From Vitrella brassicaformis CCMP3155 (Eukaryota > Protista > Chromerida), in assembly GCA_001179505.1 (NCBI GenBank), contig CDMY01000375.1, positions 31,215-95,214 on the forward strand: a DNA stretch of 64,000 nucleotides. The letters run 5' to 3'. Shown here one piece after another: positions 9,677 to 21,749 of this stretch (its first letter is position 1; every line of letters begins with the position of its first letter). The notes beneath the pieces are model-generated. The model searched no databases. It saw only the letters and a list, made by a program, of their open reading frames with translations, and had not been told where the DNA came from. A program made the position numbers and the translations under genes.

Positions 9677-12600
9677 ATGTCGAAGAAGTTGCAGAGTGAG
9701 ATAGAGCGCGTGTTGCGGGACATCAAGGTGCACGTGGAGCAGTATGACGAGAAGTTTGACGAGCTGCGGCAGTTCAACAGGGAGCGCTTCATCAACTGCG
9801 ACAAAATGAAAGACGAAGCCAAGAAGGAGGTGAGGGGTCACCTCACACGTGGCACACACACATACACACACAGACACACGCAAGGGCATAAGGCAGGCAG
9901 GCAGGCTGGCCGGTGGCAGACACAGGGAGGCATAGCGCGACTCGTACAGGCATCGCATTCGTGTGTTGTGTGCATCCCCCCGCTCACCATGTGTGTGCAG
10001 CAACTTCGCGGCAAGAAGCATGCGATTCGTACGACCACGCTTGAGCTGATGGACGTCAAGCACGTGTTGGACGGCCGTGGCCGCATTGAGGGCGAGCTCG
10101 AGAATCTGCTGCGGAAGCTGCACCGGCTGGGTCAGCAGGTCAAGGACTGGCTCAACCAAAACGATGTCAGGGACAAAGACTCACTCGAGCAGTGGAAGAA
10201 ACAGGTAGGTACCTACATATATCGGCACATACACATACACACGCACATACACACACACACACCCTTCGGCATGTGGATGGAATGTGTGTGTGTGTCAGCT
10301 TGAGGTGCGCTACAAACGTGGCAAGATCTTCTATCGCAGCGGCGAGATCAGCGAGGTCGACATGTCTGGCGAGGGAGAGGTCACCGAGCACCAGAAGTGG
10401 ATCGAGGACTACATCAGGAGGCTGGGCGACCAAAACGACCTCTTCGAAGCTGAAATCGAAGCCTCCAAGAAGAAGAAGGTCAGCCAAACCCAACACGCGC
10501 TCAATGCACAAACAGGCTGTGTGTGTGTGTGCAGAGTGCCGATTGTGAGCGTGTGGAGCAGTTGAAGGCCTTCACTGAGCTCCACCGCAGCCACATGCAG
10601 AAGCTGGAAGAACTGCTCAGGCGAATCCGAAACGGAGACCTCAGCTCAGACGTACGCAATCACATCGCCCACACACTCTCGCCCTAGCCACCGACCCACC
10701 TGTGTGTCTGTCTGTCTGTCTGTCTGTCTGGCAGAGCGAGATGGAGAAGTTGGGTGAGTTGCAGGAGGAGCTGCGGGACTATGTCGAGAATAACGACTCC
10801 CTCGACATCGTCGCCATGTGTGACGACCTCTACGCCGACCTCGGCCTCGAGGACATGCCATGCGACATGGACAAGGACGGCTCTGACACCGTCGGCGACC
10901 CCCTCACCGACGTCGGCACTCACGACGAGCCCATGCGCCTGTCGTCCATCGAGATCGACAACAATGAGGCCGCCTGGGAGGCTGGCGCTGAGCCCATGGC
11001 CGACCACCAGCCCCACCAGCAGCAGCAGCAACATGACGATGAGGGCGACAAGGCCGTCACTACTACTGCTGGCGAGCAGCGTCAGGCCAAGCGGCCGAAG
11101 AAGGGCGGCAAGGGGGCGTCCAAGGACAAGGGCGAGGCCACCAGCAGCACGAGCGCTGTTTCGCCGGCTGCTGTCACGCCCAAGGCCAGCCTCGCCGCCA
11201 CTCTCCTGGGCAAGGCCGAGCGAATCGACCACAGAGATAAGGAGGCCAAGAGCGACTTGGACAGCAACGAGTCGCAGCCCTCCCAGTGGAAGCCCAAGGC
11301 GACTCCTGAGCACCCTGTCATCCTGCCCTCGCTCGCCCCAGCAGCGGCACAGCAGCCACCCGGCAGCAAGAGGAAGGGCGACAAGACAGACACCCACACC
11401 CACACCCACACGCACAGGAAGGCCTCCGGTGACAAGTCGGCCACCAAGCACCCCTCCAGCACCAAGCAGCCCCCCGAGGTCTTCTCTCCCTCGACCTTCC
11501 CTCTGCTCCCATCCGCCACCCCGCGCTCTTTCTCCTCCACACGAGGCGGGGAGGGCTTCGCCTCGTGGGTGTCGGCGGCCAAGCAGGCGAGCGGGGAGCG
11601 GTCTGAGGCGTCGAGCGTCGAGTGTGCCATGTCCAGCACGTCGAGCCTCTCGGGGCCGGGGCAGACAAGCGCGGCCGTTGCTGCCGCCGCCGCTGCTGCT
11701 GCTGCTGGGGGCGGTGGTGCCGAGAAGGTTGGGGGGAGGAGGGGAAGTTTCAATGACACTAAGAGGGCGTCGGACACGGTAAGACGACCAGCGAGGAAAT
11801 AAGCCATGCACCATGAAGCGCGTCATTATTTCCTTGGTCTCCTGTTTGTGGTCAGGTCGGTTCGTCTGTGTCGTCTCAGCAGCACATGGCGGTCGATGAG
11901 CGCGAGACCCTTGTGTCGATGGGCTTCGCCAGCGATGCCGTCGACCGAGCCCTGATGATGCACGCGGGCAATTTTGACGACGCTCTCAACCACCTCATCC
12001 ACACCAACCAGTCGCCCAAGATTCACGAACCACCCACCCCACCACAGTCACAGCCAAGCGCATCAGCGGCTGATGAGCCAGCCCCCATGGAGCCGCCCCC
12101 ACAATCACTGCCCACAGAGCTCGCCGAGGCAGCTGAGTCACCAGATAAGGATGCTGGGGCGCCCAAGGCAGATGGTGACGGTGACGAGATCATGGAGAGG
12201 GAGAGCGAGAGGGCGAGTGAGGAGGAGGTGACGATAGGGGAGGACTGGAAGGCGGTGGGCGAGGGGCAGCTCTCCCTGTCCAAGGGCACAAGGCTACGCA
12301 TCCAGGAGCGACACAGCTCCGGATGGACCTTCGGGCAGCTCGTCCGGCCAGACGGCTCTCTCGACGACCGGCCCGACTCGTCTGGCTGGTTCCCCGACTT
12401 CCTCACCCAGCCTCCCCCTCCCCCCTCTCCACCCCGGTTGAACCCACACCCCCACACCCACCCACCCCCACCCACCACAGACAACCAGAGAGCCGGTGGC
12501 CCACCCACTTCCAGCTCGCCCGTGTCCACGGCTGCTGCCGTGCCCATGGTCACGGCATCCTCCCTGCTGCAGCGCGGCCTGGTGCTGCAGGAGCGGGTGC

Positions 12601-14497
12601 ACATCCCCAAGGTGCACCCGACGGACGAGGGCCGGTCGGCCGATGGATCGCCGGACGCCTCAGGGTCGGCCGCTGGTGTGAGGGGTGGGGGAGGAGAGGA
12701 GGGATCCGACTCGACCGACCTCGGCTCGGCCACCAGCACCGTCCGTAGCGTGTCGACGCTCACTTTGGGGCGGGGCGGCGGCGAGAGCGTGGATTTTGAT
12801 GTGTGGCAGACGGTGAGTATCGAGTCGTCCAACGAGGGAGGAGAGGGCGTCGTGGTTGGGGAGGGCGGCACTGCTGCTGGTGCTGCTGCCAGTGGAGGTG
12901 GAGGTGGTGGTGGTGAAGGGGGTGTGTTGGAGGTGCGTGAGGTGTACTGGGACTGGGCGGGCGAGTACGGCGACACCGCCACGCAAAACCTGCACTTTTC
13001 CAAGGGCGAAAGGGTAAGTCTGTCTGACACACGCACAAGCCACCCACAGTACAGTGGGGGTAGCATTAGTTCTTATGCATGTGCTTGTGTGCTATCTATC
13101 AGGTTGAGATAATCGTTCGGCATCGCTCGGGCTGGACCCACGGCCGCATCGTAGGAGAGCCAGACCGGTGAGTGAGCGGTGACACGAAATATAACGACGG
13201 GTGCGTTGCTCTCACTGCTCCGTCCGCCGATGTGTGTGTGTGTGTGTGTGTGTGTCAGCATCGGTTGGTTCCCCGACTTCATGCTCACACCCATTGAGGA
13301 TGTCGAACGCGAAATGAGAGATAAGAAGGTAACACCAGTGCACACAACAAACAAACAAACAAACACTGCCCCCCATCCCAACACGCCATCTCTCATCATT
13401 TCTTCATTCCCTCAGGGCGACGGTGCGAGTGACGTCGACCACGACGAGGCGCGCAAGGCAGCGTCGCCCCCCAAGCGGCTGTTTTTCCACCCACCAGACC
13501 CCCACCAGCCGACACACCACACAAACCCTCTCGGCCTCGGTCTCGGGGTGGGCGTTGCGCGCCACAATCACACACACGGCCACCGGCTTTCGTCCTTTAC
13601 GCTGCCGCGGGGCGTCATGGAGCAGCCACAGGACAGCCCTGAGGGCCAAGGGGGGTCGGGGGGACCCACACCGCCCGGTGAGTAGTAGGTGGCATGACCG
13701 ATGCACAGACAGACATGCAGGAGAGAGAGTGCATCCATGCGTTTGTCTTGTCTCGTGGGTGATGTGCAGGGTCGATGTGGTCCCTGGGCACCCCTCTGCT
13801 CACCCCCTTGACGACCAACGCCGGGGCCCTGACGGACAGGAGCCCAGCACCAGCAGCAGCAGGAGCAGGAGGGTCCCGTCTGCAGGCGCCCCCCTCCGGG
13901 ACATCTTTGTTCCAGACGCAGCCCAGCCTCATTCGCGGCCATGTGGAGGGGACCGCCGGCCTGACCGCCTCATTGGATGCCGAACGGCACGACGGCAGCG
14001 AGCATCAATGGACACTCAGCCACTCACGGTCCTCTCTCAGGGTAAGCAAGGGAGGGAGGGAGGCGCCATTGCTGCATCTTCCATTCTTCTGCCCCGTTTG
14101 TTTGGTCAGTCTGGCGATGGTCCTGGGAGCGAGCGAGATCTCTCCCACCACCCTTCCCCCGGTGCACTGCGTCCGTCATCCTCGATTGCCATGGCGTTTG
14201 GGAGCGGCCGGCCTGCGGGCGTCCTCGTCATAAGTGGGAGGGGGGTTTGGTCGGAGCGGACAATGACGTTGCCGGGATGGTCCAGCGATAAGACCAAGTG
14301 AGAATGCGATGAAGGAGTGGATGGCACAATTGGATCGATGGATGCACTCACTGCACGAACACTGGATGGGGTTTCGTGTGCTGTGTTGTGCTGTGCTGTG
14401 TGCTGTCAGTGCGAAGATCCCGGATGAGAACCCGTGGCGCATCTCTGCGGTGAAGGAGCATGAGACGGACACCATGGATGGCACAAGCAACGCCTGA
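9677..14497 (+). CDS. Not3/CNOT3 N-terminal-domain protein fused to UBA and two SH3 domains
   Basis: MSKKLQSEIERVLR...LRKLHRLGQQVKDWLNQNDVRDK...HRSHMQKLEELLR...LRDYVENN...DLYADLGL matches Not3-N. An in-frame 77-nt intron (11779-11855) joins it to a UBA (ETLVSMGF...ALMMHAGNFDDALNHL) and two SH3s (LSLSKG..SGWTFG..GWFPDF; LHFSKGE..SGWTHG..GWFPDF). About 12 exons; stop at 14497. Confidence 0.7.
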
Positions 14498-15099: not shown

Positions 15100-18000
15100 T
15101 CCGTCCATCTCGTGATTGATCTAGCTAGAGCGCCCCAGCAGCTCGCTTGATGCACATGGACACGCTGAGGCTCTCGCCACCGCCACCGGGCCGGCCAGCG
15201 CCCCACTGAATGTCGCTAACGCCCTCACTCTCCTCAACAGAGGAAGCAGCAGCGGCAGCTGTTGCTGTTGCCGCCGCCGGAGGTGACGGCTTCGTCACCT
15301 GAAATGATCAACGGATACGGTGTTTCTGCTCTGCTCTGTCCGTCTGTCCATTATTCCATGTGTCATTCACTTTGTGTGGGTGCTGTGGTGTGCTCACCAG
15401 TTGCACGACTCCCCTCGGGGCCACAGCCATCGGATTGTAAGGCACTTGAGCAGCTGTCACATCCAACGACACTGCGGACGGACACAAAGAAGAACAATGG
15501 CAAAACGCCACGAGGGCCCTGTGTGTGCCCCTCTCTCTCTCTCTCACCCACTCAACTCCACTCACCTCCTGTGTTGAGCGTGCCCTTGACCCGCACTTGT
15601 GTGGGCATCTTGAGGGGCCGCCCACTGCCACGCACACCATCACCACACACACACGATGCTGCTGAGGAGGACGATGCGGAGGGCATAGCAGGGGCCGCCA
15701 GGATGTCCGGCGGCGTGGCGATCCATGTGGCCGTCGCCAGCCGACTCAGACCTACTGCAAAATGCGGCAGGCTGCCCTCTGTCGATGTGCTGCAGGCAGG
15801 CAGGCAGGCAGTAAGCGCATGTGAGGGTCTGTCTGTGTCTCTGCGTATACAGCACAGCGGCAGAGCGATTGACACACCCACCGGTAGTATAGTGTGGCTT
15901 TCTTGACGAGGTGTCTGAGTGCCTCCCACGGCAGCTTGGCCATCACACCCAACACACACAACTCTGACAGACAGACAGACAGACAGACACATATGAGACA
16001 TGACATGAACGAACGACACACACCTACAATAAGTATTCACGCAGCTAGCTGCATACATACCTGCAATGTGCAGGAACTTCCTGAGGCGGTGCACCTGCTG
16101 GTCCAAACCCTGGGATGCATCCACATACCAATTCTACAGACACACACACACACACACAACATTGTCCACACGCGCATTCATTCATTGTCTCTCTCTCATA
16201 GTCTCCTTGTTCGTTACGATGTCGCTTTGTGCGGATGGGTCTGTTTTGAGTACGATCTGTGTGAGCGCCCGGCGCACGCTGTCCAGCCCCATCTCTGCCA
16301 TCACCAGCGCCACGTGGCGCTGACACACACACACACACACGGGAACACACACGGGAACACGCGAGACACATCGAGTGCCATCCATTCACTGGTCTGTTCT
16401 TGGTCGGCTAATGCCTACATACCGGGTCCTCTAGAGCGGCCCTTTGGTCCTGCCACTGCTTCTGCAAGGTGCTGATCTCCTGACCAGCCTGACTAATGTA
16501 ATGGACCAACCAAGCAGCCAGCCAGCCAGCCAATCGACCGACAAATGGGGCCACAGCAGGAGAAAGAAGAAACAGTGTATGTGGATGCATCAGGCCTTAC
16601 TGACCGCTACGGTCCCATAGTGCGCTAGCTGATAGATGCGGACGGCCTGCATCCAATCCAGTCCATCCGACAGACAGACAGACACATGCACTGCACTCAT
16701 CCCGTTCGTTCCCTGTGGCCCTTTCTCGTCTGTCTGTCTGTCAGCTGACCGTTTCGATCATCCGTGCCATCTTGGTGGGGTTGTCCCGCCTCACGTGCGG
16801 CAGCAATGGACGCTCACACACACCGCCACCTGCACCACCACTGCCCCCTGACTTGCTCAGACGACGGACACGGCCGCCCCCTTGCCATTGGGATGCCCCC
16901 GGTGGTGTGGGTGTGGGTGTGGGTGTGGGTGTTGGGAGTCTTGCGCGCTGGTCGATTTCGTTGAGGATGGCGCGCAGGGCCTCCTGCACGTCGGCCAGGT
17001 TGTACCCACCTGCATCCATCGACAGATGCATAATCAACACACAAGCCAATAAGGGAATGCGTGCATTCTCAGCAAGAGAGAGAGAGACAGACAAACTCTC
17101 CCTCTACTTACGCTTGAGGAAGAGCCACAGCCGCTCGATGAAGTCCCGCCCCTCACTCTGACACATGCACACACATGACAGACACCCAACAAACACGCAG
17201 GCCTTCATTCATTCATCTCTTCCCTCTTTCTTCTCTTTGTGACCATTCCGCTCACCGTGGTCCATCCCGATCTGAGTGTGGCGTAGAGCGATGTGGGTGG
17301 GGGATGGGCGCCGTTCTTGTGACCCACACCCACAGGCGCCCTCTCAGCGGGCGATGGCGTGTGTGGCTCCCGGGGCGCCGCCCGTGTGATGGAGTCGAGC
17401 CGCGACGCCGCCGCATCCATGGCCGTCAGATGGCCCTGCTCCTGGGATAGAAACGCCTGAACACCAACACACGGCAGGAAAGTGCTGGGTTGGGGTGTGT
17501 GGTTGTCTGTCACGTGTTTCCTGTCACCTTGACATAGTTGCAGAGTTCCATTTTCCTGCACCACTTGAGGTCTGTGGTGGGGTCCGCGGCCGTGAAGTCC
17601 TCGGCCGTCAGGTCGGTGCCCGTCGCCACACTTGCAAAGTCCTCCAGACCCTCCTCGCTGTCTACGCCGCCAACGCGACTTGACAACCCCTGGTCCTTCC
17701 TGAAGGTACGTGGTGACGGGACGGTAGGTGGTGTGTGTGTGTGGTGGGGTTGGGTTTGTCTGTTTACACGTGTAGGCACTTGTCGATGGATTGGAATGCG
17801 GCCTCCTCGTCGGCGCCATAGCTCTCGAGCACCATCATCGACTGCAGCAGCTCGCCCACCACCAGCAACTCGTCTACGTGACCCTTCAAATACCCACCTG
17901 CATTGCAGGACACACACATGATGCAATCAATGCACACAACCCAGCCCCGTCTCTCCCCCTCTGTCTGTCGACAGCTCACTCACCTTCCTCAAACCCCGCT

Positions 18001-19382
18001 TTGAGTATGATGACCGCATCAGTGTCCATTGGGGGCGGTGCTGGGGGCAGCAGGGATGGCAGAAGGGCTGACGGGGCCACACCACCGCCACCACCACCCC
18101 CTGTGACGGTCCAGAAGAGCTGCAGACAGATGAACGGCCCCCCGCACAGCCGATACGAGTCCAGGGAGGCCCGAGGGCTCATCGGAGGACCCAACTGACA
18201 CAGCATGAGAGAGAGGGGGTGTGATAGCTTGACGGATGGATGGATGGATGTGTGGGTGTACCGTACCTCGAGCATTTTGGAGCTGAGGTCGAATCTTGCG
18301 ATGACGGAAACAGGACCCTGTGGGCAGGGAGCGAACCAGCATACAGTAAATAATGTGACCGACATGTACACAGACAAGAGGATCAGACCAACACGTGTCT
18401 GTCGTGTCGATCAGATGCAGACCTGAAACGCCGGCATAGGAGGCAGCAGGCCGTCCAGTGGCGCCGTGACGGTCTCGCCTACAAGGAAGGCACAGACGCA
18501 CACAAAGGCAATGCTCAGCTCACGACGTCGCGTCGCCTTCGTTCGTTCCTCCCTCTCTCCCTTTTATATACAGTACATGCATTGCATACCCGCAGATCCG
18601 AGTGATGCAAACGCGTAAGTTTCGTCAAACAGCTGGCCCTCCTCACCCCCAGCACCACCCCTATTGCCAATCCCCCAATACAGCGTCTGCCACCTGCCGC
18701 CCCCCTCCCTCGCCACATAAAACAGCACGGGCGCGCCCACCACATACGGCTCTCCTCCTCCTCCCCCCTGTGTGCTGCTGTCCTGGAGCATGGCCATCAC
18801 CACCTGCTGGCTCTCGCCCATCGACATGGGCGTGAGGGCGTCTTCGCGGATGGCCGTGTCGAATTCTGAGTGGTCGGGGGTGTCCTTGTGGGCGTGGTGT
18901 GGATGCGTGTGTTTGCTGGTGCCCCTGACGAGGGTGGCGCCCTGCGCGCGGTGGCCGCACTGGAGCACTTGGGAGTTGTGGTCGCCCTCCAGATACAAAG
19001 GCTGCACAACAGATCAAACATCAAACATCACAAACAACACACACAAGATGCATGAGCGAATGAATAAGGGAATCGATGTCCATCCACCCACCCATCCAAT
19101 TCTTGCCTGCAGGGCGTTCTGCAGGTGATCTCCCTTGCCTTCCACCTCCTTCTCGTCCGTGCCATCCACACGCGGCGCCCGCGACACGAGGACGAACCCG
19201 TCGGTGAAGTGCTCACACAGGGGGTGGTAGGGCGACCGATGCTTGCTGCCGTCCCCCTTCCCGCCCAGCCGCCACACCACATACGAACCCACTACCTGGC
19301 CGGGAGCCCCCGATGAAGGCAGATCTTTGTCCGGGGAGATGCCTCGCCACGTTTGGCCAAGACAACACAGCAGATCCTCCAT
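15100..19382 (-). CDS. ZWILCH: Zwilch-like kinetochore (RZZ) protein
   Basis: Multi-exon gene from ATG 19382. The colinear blocks ICLQLFWT, MDTDAVIILKAGFEEG, GRDFIERLWLFLKRGYNLADVQEALRAIL, LVMAEMGLDSVRRAL, QGLDQQVHRLRKFLH and ALRHLVKKATLYY parallel my recollection of human Zwilch. The 3' end is approximate. Confidence 0.65.
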
Positions 19383-19581: not shown

Positions 19582-20634
19582 ATGCCGACAGAGTATTTGG
19601 TTGTGCAGTGCTATAGCTGCGGGATGCACCAGTGCATTCAGGTGACGGATGCATCCATCAAAAAGAGTGCAGACATCTGTGTACGTCTGCATCTGTGCGT
19701 ACGTGTTTGCCATACTCAGGCGGTGAAGAGTAGGAAGTTCAGTTGCAAGATCTGCCACGAGAAGCAGAGCATTCAGAAGGTATCTACAGCCGATATATAA
19801 GACCATCACACTGAGTCTCCTCCTTCCCGCCTCCCTGCCTCTCTCATTTTGCTGCATGCGTGGTGCATCTGTCTGTTTTTGGTGGTGCCCTGCAGGTGCT
19901 CGACTCGTCCACCAACCCGGCCGACCTCCGGCCCGTCATCCAGCAGCTCAACTCGCACCTAGGGCAGATACACCAGCAGATGAGGGAGGAGAGAAATCGC
20001 CAAATCGACGAGTACCAGCGGCCGTCAGACATGATGATGGGGGTGCAGCCGGCGGCTGCCAGCGAGCCAGCAGCAGCAGCCCCAAACGCGCCCCTCCTCC
20101 TGGCGGGATCTGCCGGTGCATCTGCATCATCTCGCTGGGCCCAGTATCTTGATGAAGACCAGGCGGCGCAACCCCCTCCCCCACCGCCCCCCTCCCCGCC
20201 TCTGTCGCCAATCGGGCAGCGCAACTACAGGGGCAGAGGCAGGGGGCGTGGGAGGGGCAGGGGCGCAGGCTACCGCCGCAAACAGGATGGAGTGGATGGC
20301 CATGACGATGACCTGCAGCCATACAAGAGGGTCAAGAGGAGCGGCGGCGATAATGCCGACGATTTTGAGTCGTTCTTGGCGGCCGGTGGGGATGGGATGG
20401 ACATCGGAGGGGGTGAAAGGGAGGCTGCTGGTTCATGGAGGGGATTTGGCGGCAATGGCGGGTTTGGCCCGCAGGGCAGCGCTGCGCCGGGTCCCCAATA
20501 TGGGAATAGCGACGCTGCAGGGGCTGGGCCCAATGCAGGGAGCAGGTACATGAAGGGACATGTGCGCGTGACGGTTTCCTCTTTCCTGCTCCTTGTGTGT
20601 GCATTGCGTATCCAGGTGGGGCCGCTTCCTGTGA
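19582..20634 (+). CDS. MRNIP: MRN complex-interacting protein
   Basis: The spliced N-terminus MPTEYLVVQCYSCGMHQCIQAVKSRKFSCKICHEKQSIQK..ADLRPVIQQLN has the CxxC...CxxC MRNIP zinc-ribbon pattern. It carries an SRWAQYL motif and a terminal exon SRWGRFL*. Confidence 0.8.
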
Positions 20635-21749
20635 GAGATATCTAAGATACACACGAGGGAGGGTGCCCGATGCTCGATTCAGTGCATGCCATGGGTCAGA
20701 CGTCGTTGTATCAGAATTCAGAATTCATTCATGCTGCGTTGCGTGGCTGTGACGATCTACATGGTGACGATGTGTGACGTGTTTTCGTGAATATCATTTG
20801 TGAACGTGGCAACGCCATTCGAGCACCACAACAATACAAACGGGTCCAATAGGTCCATTGATTGATAGCTTCACACAACCAACGCATCGATCCAAGCATG
20901 CTTCGTCTGCCCAGTGTCAGTCATGCAACAGATGCAGCCCTCGCGTGCAGGTCCACCCGACAATCCACTCGCCAAATCGTCAAGCAAACCTGCGCACAGG
21001 CGGCTCGGCTGCACGACAATCTGGGCAGAGGAAGGCTGCGAACACACCAGTTGAGTTGGACCCGACAGGGTGTTTTACAGTCAGTCAGCCAGGAAGGCAA
21101 GCAGACAGGCAGCCAAGCCACTCAACTCATCCATCCAGCCGTTCACGGGACACCATGAGATCAGCGCCCTTTTGCAGGCACACCGAAGTGCTGCACGGCA
21201 CGCAGTCAGCGTCTAGACACCATCCATCCGCATCTGGCTCTCTCTCTCTCTCTCTCTCTCTGCACGTACATCCATGCCTCGCACCACACACAGGGTCTTA
21301 CTAAACACCATGACAAAGAGCCCAACACGTGTTATAACACTTTATGTTTGTATGCAGAAACGGCATCCCATCCACCCACCCACCCGTCCATCCATCCATC
21401 CATGAGTGACACACATGAATGGAATGGGTGTCTCATTGACAGCCACACCACAGCAGCCACGAAAGGATGGATCCATGGACATGCACCCACGCACCTCACG
21501 GTCGATCTATCTAAATATTCAGATGATCTCTCTCAGTGGGCGTGCGGTGCGCGAAAAAGGAGGGCCTCTCAGGCGTGGCCAGCAAAGCAGCGTCATCTCA
21601 CTTGGCACTGCACTTGACAATTGGCACACCAGAAAATACCAGCCGTCATGTGTACGTATCGACACAGCTACACAAAATGGTGGATGTACGTTATGTGATC
21701 ATGCAGACAGGAAGTATGCAAGAGTGAGTGATATTTGATAGATCTGATC

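What the first reader, a model, noticed from the sequence alone, without database searches (positions are those of the whole stretch)
15100..19382. Probable Zwilch (RZZ kinetochore corona subunit) homolog in an alveolate
Seen in sequence: when spliced, the exons give ordered blocks that line up with human Zwilch as I recall it. ICLQLFWT ~ IALDISWS; PPMDTDAVIILKAGFEEG ~ PPLSSTATLNIKVESGE; GRDFIERLW..NLADVQEALRAIL ~ DLDFAEQLW..SYQDLVKCFTLII; VMAEMGLDSVRRAL ~ MLLEIGLDKLKKDY; LDQQVHRLRKFLH ~ IQEQVYRVQKLHH; LRHLVKKATLYY ~ LFSLTQICIKYY. Established: RZZ is best known in animals, is patchily distributed elsewhere, and is not part of the characterised apicomplexan kinetochore. Inference: this lineage may retain a fibrous-corona/dynein-recruiting module. 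The gene is invisible in the ORF track because it is split into about 15 exons.
Basis: partly seen in the sequence, partly recalled or inferred. Interest (0 to 1): 0.85.

Follow-up and report, generated by a model that had tools for sequence, protein, structure and literature searches.

The report
Divergent Zwilch kinetochore gene in Vitrella
An 18-exon gene of the alga Vitrella brassicaformis, annotated only as "uncharacterized", very probably encodes a highly diverged Zwilch, a subunit of the RZZ kinetochore complex. This extends a family already reported in one apicomplexan (Cryptosporidium) rather than revealing something new in kind.

Summary
The gene is real. It lies on the minus strand at 19382..15125, with 18 exons and GT-AG introns throughout. 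It encodes the annotated 888-aa Vitrella brassicaformis protein P0001, which carries no name and no Pfam domain.

Three blocks in the C-terminal half match bona fide Zwilch proteins, in the family's order:
- aa 513-542 match Thecamonas Zwilch (33 bits, 0 of 5000 shuffles reach the score).
- aa 589-616 match Cryptosporidium Zwilch (27.7 bits, 0 of 5000 shuffles).
- aa 652-733 match human Zwilch residues 419-501, the top PDB hit (phmmer E 0.039).

Other tests gave no support:
- The Pfam Zwilch model gives no hit.
- Structure could not be tested. No homologues were retrievable, and single-sequence AlphaFold models had pLDDT 36 and 49.

I read it as a divergent Zwilch orthologue, with confidence about 0.8. 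Novelty is modest. Van Hooff et al. 2017 already list Rod, ZW10 and Zwilch orthologues in Cryptosporidium parvum and in stramenopiles. This is therefore a new, unannotated member of a known family, implying retention in chromerids and loss in most Apicomplexa. ROD, ZW10 and Spindly in Vitrella were not testable here.

The parts
15125..19382 (-). Whole coding region of the gene (ATG at 19382, stop at 15125-15127). It encodes the 888-aa protein P0001, gene call in NCBI GCA_001179505.1 contig CDMY01000375.1.
   Evidence: Exact spliced mapping; phmmer recovers P0001 at 99% identity from exon 2; single gene call.
19092..19382 (-). Exon 1 (aa 1-97).
18590..19001 (-). Exon 2 (aa 98-234). Contains PVLFYVAREGGGRWQTLYWG, which resembles the Zwilch P-L-W-V...W-L-G strand pair by eye only.
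   Evidence: No relative other than P0001 itself among 1.84 billion representative proteins.
18423..18478 (-). Exon 3 (aa 235-253).
18267..18317 (-). Exon 4 (aa 254-270). Contains ARFDLSS.
17984..18194 (-). Exon 5 (aa 271-340).
   Evidence: Similarity to human Zwilch is not above chance.
17768..17897 (-). Exon 6 (aa 341-383).
17528..17699 (-). Exon 7 (aa 384-441).
17256..17456 (-). Exon 8 (aa 442-508).
17112..17157 (-). Exon 9 (aa 509-523). Start of Zwilch signature block C (GRDFIERLWLFLK).
16750..17009 (-). Exon 10 (aa 524-610). Holds the rest of block C (to aa 542), a PT/Gly-rich low-complexity insert (about aa 547-587), and the start of block D (ERPLLPHVRRDNPTKMARMIET).
16605..16646 (-). 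Exon 11 (aa 611-624). End of block D.
16423..16488 (-). Exon 12 (aa 625-646).
16218..16319 (-). Exon 13 (aa 647-680). Start of block E (VMAEMGLDSVRRAL).
16061..16133 (-). Exon 14 (aa 681-704). Block E (LDQQVHRLRKFLH).
15882..15963 (-). Exon 15 (aa 705-731). Most of the end of block E (LRHLVKKATLYY); the block's last two residues (aa 732-733) are in exon 16.
15566..15789 (-). Exon 16 (aa 732-806). Carries the last two residues of block E, then a low-complexity tail.
   Evidence: Its 3' junction is confirmed by an RNA contig.
15472..15565 (-). Intron 16, the only intron confirmed by an RNA-derived contig (GT..AG on the minus strand).
   Evidence: joint 15471/15566 in run X6.
15398..15471 (-). 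Exon 17 (aa 807-831).
15125..15298 (-). Exon 18 (aa 832-888 plus the stop codon). Ala-rich tail.

Best explanation
[quoted passage not shown] Shown here: the C-terminal half (about aa 510-735) carries the three most conserved Zwilch blocks in the family's order, interrupted by Vitrella-typical low-complexity inserts. Inferred from what is established for human RZZ: the protein would bind the N-terminal beta-propeller of a ROD orthologue. As part of an RZZ-like complex it would sit at unattached kinetochores, helping to recruit checkpoint proteins (Mad1-Mad2) and possibly a dynein adaptor. None of these functional steps was tested.
For: The organism and protein are identified (Vitrella brassicaformis CCMP3155, unnamed or uncharacterized, no Pfam). 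The gene model is and the single gene call. Block E: a hypothesis-free phmmer search against 177,635 PDB sequences puts human Zwilch (3if8_B, 7qpg_B residues 419-501) first for aa 652-733, E 0.039 (E 0.24 with the full-length query). Block C: aa 513-542 against Thecamonas trahens Zwilch scores 74 (33 bits), including the identical 8-mer ERLWLFLK. None of 5000 shuffles reaches it, and E is about 2e-3 to 1e-5 for the whole 40-sequence orthologue file. Block D: aa 589-616 against Cryptosporidium parvum Zwilch scores 60 (27.7 bits), 0 of 5000 shuffles. The Allomyces and Capsaspora blocks land at the same place. The three blocks are in the same order as in human Zwilch (about 344-380, 381-405, 419-501; sequence). 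The best block D match is to the only alveolate orthologue in the set, as phylogeny would predict.
Against: The Pfam Zwilch model PF09817 gives no hit at E<=10 for the whole protein or for 8 sub-ranges. The N-terminal half, which corresponds to the part of human Zwilch that contacts ROD, shows no similarity above chance and has no detectable relatives at all. The fold could not be checked: AlphaFold pLDDT was 36 and 49, and the Foldseek output is meaningless. The block tests used short blocks that I picked by eye from the orthologue file. I corrected for the whole file's search space, but this is not a formal profile search. The presence of ROD and ZW10 in Vitrella is unknown.
Confidence: 0.8

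Rival explanations
1. The protein is a lineage-specific Vitrella protein unrelated to Zwilch, and the block matches are chance similarities in a long, compositionally biased protein.
For: No Pfam hit. No homologue found in three word-indexed searches, or in the representative search with exon 2. The only hypothesis-free hit is marginal (E 0.039-0.24). Atlas look-alikes are uninformative.
Against: Three independent blocks match three different Zwilch orthologues, in the family's order. Composition-preserving shuffles never reach the observed scores for blocks C and D (0 of 5000 each). Zwilch is rank 1 of all PDB sequences for block E.
Confidence: 0.08
2. The protein shares only the Zwilch C-terminal domain. 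Its N-terminal half is unrelated, either replaced or a mis-joined gene model, so it may not bind ROD or act in an RZZ complex.
For: The N-terminal blocks are at chance level. aa 98-236 have no relative in 1.84 billion representative proteins. Only one intron, in the 3' part, has RNA support, so the join of the 5' and 3' exons rests on the annotation and on frame-consistent GT-AG splicing.
Against: All 17 introns are canonical, short and frame-preserving within one compact 4.3-kb gene bounded by other genes. Zwilch N-terminal domains are poorly conserved even among the listed orthologues. The low-confidence AlphaFold run predicts beta strands at aa 190-206, 284-297 and 333-337 followed by helices. 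From my own recollection of the published structure, not tested here, that pattern fits the Zwilch N-terminal domain.
Confidence: 0.12

Closest known systems
Human Zwilch (ZWILCH; PDB 3IF8, chain B of the RZZ cryo-EM structure 7QPG)
   Same: aa 652-733 align to residues 419-501 with one gap, sharing E[IM]GLD, QV.R..K..HI.E and the YY motif. The D-F-x-E-x-L-W block and the following helix are present upstream in the same order.
   Different: 888 aa against 591 aa, with Gly-, Pro/Thr- and Ala-rich inserts and a roughly 150-aa low-complexity tail. The N-terminal domain is not recognisably similar. It falls below the Pfam family threshold.
Cryptosporidium parvum Zwilch orthologue (CPAI002716 in van Hooff et al. 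2017, Dataset EV1)
   Same: It is the only alveolate orthologue in that set and gives the best match for block D: P.VR.DN.T...I..A..IY, 27.7 bits. It belongs to a genome that also has Rod and ZW10 orthologues.
   Different: Overall identity is low.
Thecamonas trahens Zwilch orthologue (TTRA004086 in van Hooff et al. 2017)
   Same: Block C: DF.ERLWLFLK....L.D....LR.I, 33 bits over 30 residues with no gap.
   Different: It comes from a distant lineage (Apusozoa). The rest of the protein was not compared.

Membership tests
Zwilch (RZZ complex subunit; Pfam PF09817) | Match to the Pfam Zwilch profile at or above its gathering score. | tested here: not met
   No Pfam family at E<=10 for P0001 or for the sub-ranges 1-110, 230-420, 280-360, 480-550, 600-800, 640-760, 230-760 and 480-760. 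The only hits were two unrelated weak matches.
Zwilch (RZZ complex subunit; Pfam PF09817) | Sequence similarity to the structurally characterised human Zwilch C-terminal domain. | tested here: inconclusive
   Top PDB hit. aa 652-733 align to 3if8_B 85-167 and 7qpg_B 419-501, E 0.039 and 0.11; E 0.24 and 0.91 with the full-length query. Marginal on its own.
Zwilch (RZZ complex subunit; Pfam PF09817) | Signature block D-[FL]-x-[ED]-x-[LV]-W followed by an amphipathic helix. It is present in nearly all of the roughly 40 orthologues of van Hooff 2017. | tested here: met
   GRDFIERLWLFLKRGYNLADVQEALRAILNEI at aa 511-542. 33 bits against Thecamonas Zwilch, 0 of 5000 shuffles. The motif is visible across the orthologues.
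Zwilch (RZZ complex subunit; Pfam PF09817) | Block L-x-P-x-h-x-R-x-N-x-[ST]-x-h-A-x-h-I, downstream of the signature block. | tested here: met
   LLPHVRRDNPTKMARMIETAVRIY at aa 592-615. 27.7 bits against Cryptosporidium Zwilch, 0 of 5000 shuffles. Allomyces and Capsaspora blocks land at the same place.
Zwilch (RZZ complex subunit; Pfam PF09817) | Blocks occur in the family's order along the protein. | tested here: met
   Block C at 513-542, block D at 589-616 and block E at 652-733 in P0001, against about 344-380, 381-405 and 419-501 in human Zwilch.
Zwilch (RZZ complex subunit; Pfam PF09817) | N-terminal domain homologous to Zwilch domain 1, the ROD beta-propeller contact. | tested here: inconclusive
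   phmmer of aa 140-300 and aa 250-400 against PDB gives no Zwilch hit. The human blocks score at chance at the proposed places. Motif resemblances (P.LF.V...W.G; ARFDL against AQYEL) are by eye only.
Zwilch (RZZ complex subunit; Pfam PF09817) | The two-domain Zwilch fold, as in 3IF8 and 7QPG. | tested here: inconclusive
AlphaFold2 without an alignment gave mean pLDDT 36.4 for the full protein and 49.4 for aa 496-770. No homologues were available to build an alignment.
Zwilch (RZZ complex subunit; Pfam PF09817) | Co-occurrence with a ROD (KNTC1) orthologue in the same genome. The phylogenetic profiles correlate at r = 0.859 in van Hooff 2017. | not testable with these tools
   Only this 64-kb window is held, and no tool searches the Vitrella genome or proteome with an external query. 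The scan's notes hold nothing under ZW10, KNTC1 or Spindly.
Zwilch (RZZ complex subunit; Pfam PF09817) | Kinetochore localisation and assembly into RZZ. | not testable with these tools
   This is an experimental question.

The most novel reading that the evidence does not exclude
Chromerids retain a working ROD-Zwilch(-ZW10) module, possibly with a dynein adaptor, at their kinetochores. The myzozoan ancestor would then have had an RZZ-type outer-kinetochore or checkpoint layer that was lost in Plasmodium and Toxoplasma but kept in Cryptosporidium and in free-living relatives. Vitrella would be a reference point for reconstructing how the apicomplexan kinetochore was stripped down.
Probability: 0.35. 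Interest if true: 0.5.

Novelty: new member of a known kind. Interest (0 to 1): 0.35.

Why it matters
It gives a name to an unannotated Vitrella protein and adds a second alveolate lineage to the Rod-Zwilch distribution. That supports vertical retention from the alveolate or myzozoan ancestor, with later loss in most Apicomplexa, rather than an oddity of Cryptosporidium. It also shows that the Pfam Zwilch model misses such diverged members, so published absences of RZZ in protists may be under-calls. It does not by itself show a fibrous corona or dynein recruitment.

Tried and rejected
- **Pfam.** Raw ORF pieces, the spliced protein and 8 sub-ranges gave no Zwilch hit.
- **Gene model.** My own splice-site and codon dynamic-programming model chose wrong frames around 18.4-17.9 kb. 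I dropped it in favour of exact mapping of the annotated protein. The first mapping script timed out.
- **RNA support.** The runs found are almost all DNA. The one RNA-like run covers little and confirms a single intron.
- **Homologue retrieval.** The search for homologous proteins returned only the query itself for the whole protein, aa 640-760 and aa 497-546 (one search was a parameter slip). The metagenome scan found no relative. In hindsight a full-length query would have been the better use.
- **ESM Atlas.** Look-alikes for the whole protein and for aa 500-760 were uninformative.
- **PDB sub-range searches.** phmmer with aa 495-548, 250-400 and 140-300 gave no Zwilch hit. The Sm-like, ubiquitin and PD-1 hits are short or low-complexity chance matches.
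- **Structure.** Two AlphaFold jobs without an alignment gave low-confidence models, and Foldseek gave no meaningful match.
- **Block after the YY motif.** The proposed match of Capsaspora HPLFVLAMP... to PHFAVGLSRL scored at chance and is rejected.
- I therefore did not paste them, and did no HMM or HH profile search against them. I used only a few conserved blocks of 40 residues or fewer.
Full report
**What is there.** The window is GC-rich (about 58%) and intron-rich. A phmmer search with the longest exon (window 18567-19004, minus strand) against 1.84 billion representative proteins returned one true match, P0001. It is 888 aa and 99% identical over the exon. Its sources call it "unnamed protein product [Vitrella brassicaformis CCMP3155]" or "Uncharacterized protein", with no Pfam domain.

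Exact spliced mapping of P0001 onto the window gives 18 exons on the minus strand from 19382 (ATG) to 15125 (stop). All 17 introns are GT-AG and 68-116 nt long. NCBI assembly GCA_001179505.1 (contig CDMY01000375.1) has this as a single gene call. It lies between a divergently transcribed 248-aa gene and a Not3-domain gene. Of the public runs that hold the stretch, nearly all are DNA. One RNA-like run confirms a single splice junction, 15471/15566, which is intron 16.

**Standard family tests.** Pfam gives nothing for raw ORF pieces, for the spliced protein or for eight sub-ranges. Word-indexed homology searches with the whole protein, aa 640-760 and aa 497-546 returned only the query itself. 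A metagenome scan found no relative. ESM Atlas look-alikes were uninformative. With no homologues, AlphaFold2 had to run on the single sequence. It gave mean pLDDT 36 for the full protein and 49 for aa 496-770. The structural arm is untested, not negative.

**Evidence for Zwilch.**
1. *Hypothesis-free search.* phmmer of P0001 against all 177,635 distinct PDB sequences lists human Zwilch (3if8_B, 7qpg_B). This is the only non-low-complexity hit of any length: aa 652-733 against residues 419-501, E 0.24. With aa 600-800 as the query, Zwilch is rank 1 at E 0.039.
2. *Orthologue set.* The supplement of van Hooff et al. 2017 (PMC5579357, Dataset EV1, Zwilch.fa) prints about 40 curated Zwilch orthologues. 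These full sequences have no tool reference, so I did not paste them. I tested only a few conserved blocks of 40 residues or fewer by Smith-Waterman with composition-preserving shuffles.
   - The family's signature block (D-F-x-E-x-L-W plus the following helix) from Thecamonas aligns without gaps to aa 513-542. The score is 74 (33 bits), with an identical ERLWLFLK. None of 5000 shuffles reaches it. E is about 2e-3 (Karlin-Altschul) to 1e-5 (Gumbel) after correction for the whole orthologue file.
   - The next family block (L-x-P-x-h-x-R-x-N...) from Cryptosporidium aligns to aa 589-616. The score is 60 (27.7 bits), again 0 of 5000 shuffles. The Allomyces and Capsaspora versions land at the same place.
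3. *Order.* The three blocks lie in the same order as in human Zwilch. They are separated in Vitrella by a Pro/Thr- and Gly-rich insert.

Three independent, collinear matches to three different orthologues make chance very unlikely. The best block D match is to the only alveolate orthologue in the set.

**What is not supported.** A further block that I proposed after the YY motif is also at chance. The N-terminal half corresponds to the part of human Zwilch that contacts the ROD propeller. It is therefore unverified, and only by-eye resemblances exist (PVLFYV...WG; ARFDL against AQYEL).

**Mechanism.** The homology of the C-terminal half to the Zwilch C-terminal domain is shown. The rest is inferred from established knowledge of human RZZ, as described in the abstracts of the RZZ structure papers listed and in van Hooff 2017. 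On that basis the protein would be the Zwilch subunit of a ROD-Zwilch-ZW10 complex acting at unattached kinetochores in checkpoint signalling, and possibly in dynein-adaptor recruitment. Whether Vitrella has ROD, ZW10 or Spindly could not be tested. The scan's own notes hold nothing under those names, and hold only one other kinetochore note for this genome, on a CENP-C-like gene.

**Comparison with what is known, and novelty.** Van Hooff et al. 2017 place Rod and Zwilch as a co-evolving pair (r = 0.859), with Spindly as a third co-evolving partner. Their dataset already contains Zwilch, Rod and ZW10 orthologues of Cryptosporidium parvum, and Zwilch orthologues of several stramenopiles. It contains no Zwilch for Toxoplasma or Perkinsus, and no Spindly for Cryptosporidium. 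I found no paper that mentions Zwilch in Vitrella or Chromera beyond a passing citation.

The finding is thus a new, previously unannotated and unusually diverged member of a known family, in a lineage where it was to be expected once Cryptosporidium has it. It supports retention in the apicomplexan stem with later loss in Plasmodium and Toxoplasma. It also warns that Pfam-based absences of RZZ are unreliable.

**Verdict.** Divergent Zwilch orthologue, confidence about 0.8. Novelty: new member of a known kind. Interest 0.35.

Noticed in passing
window 19582-20645 (+): The divergently transcribed upstream neighbour is an MRNIP (MRN-complex-interacting protein) homologue split into small exons. 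Exon 2 (19720-19779) hits Pfam PF15749 positions 17-34 at E 4.6e-05. The next exon hits positions 39-106 at E 0.29, collinear with the first. The NCBI gene call for it (248 aa) carries no Pfam annotation.
   Followed up: partly
window 16668 (intron 10 of the gene): The DNA runs X1, X3 and X4 carry an extra GACAGACA unit in the (GACA)n microsatellite relative to the window. This is a length polymorphism or an assembly difference.
   Followed up: no
window 15790-15816, 16505-16540, 16669-16700, 17724-17750: Short tetranucleotide-type repeats (CAGG/CAGC/GACA-like) inside introns recur on many other contigs of the genome. They give depth spikes and false joints when reads are laid on the stretch.
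   Followed up: no
window 9677-14497 (-): The downstream neighbour is a 1266-aa gene with a Pfam Not3 domain and a faint SH3_1 hit.
   Followed up: no
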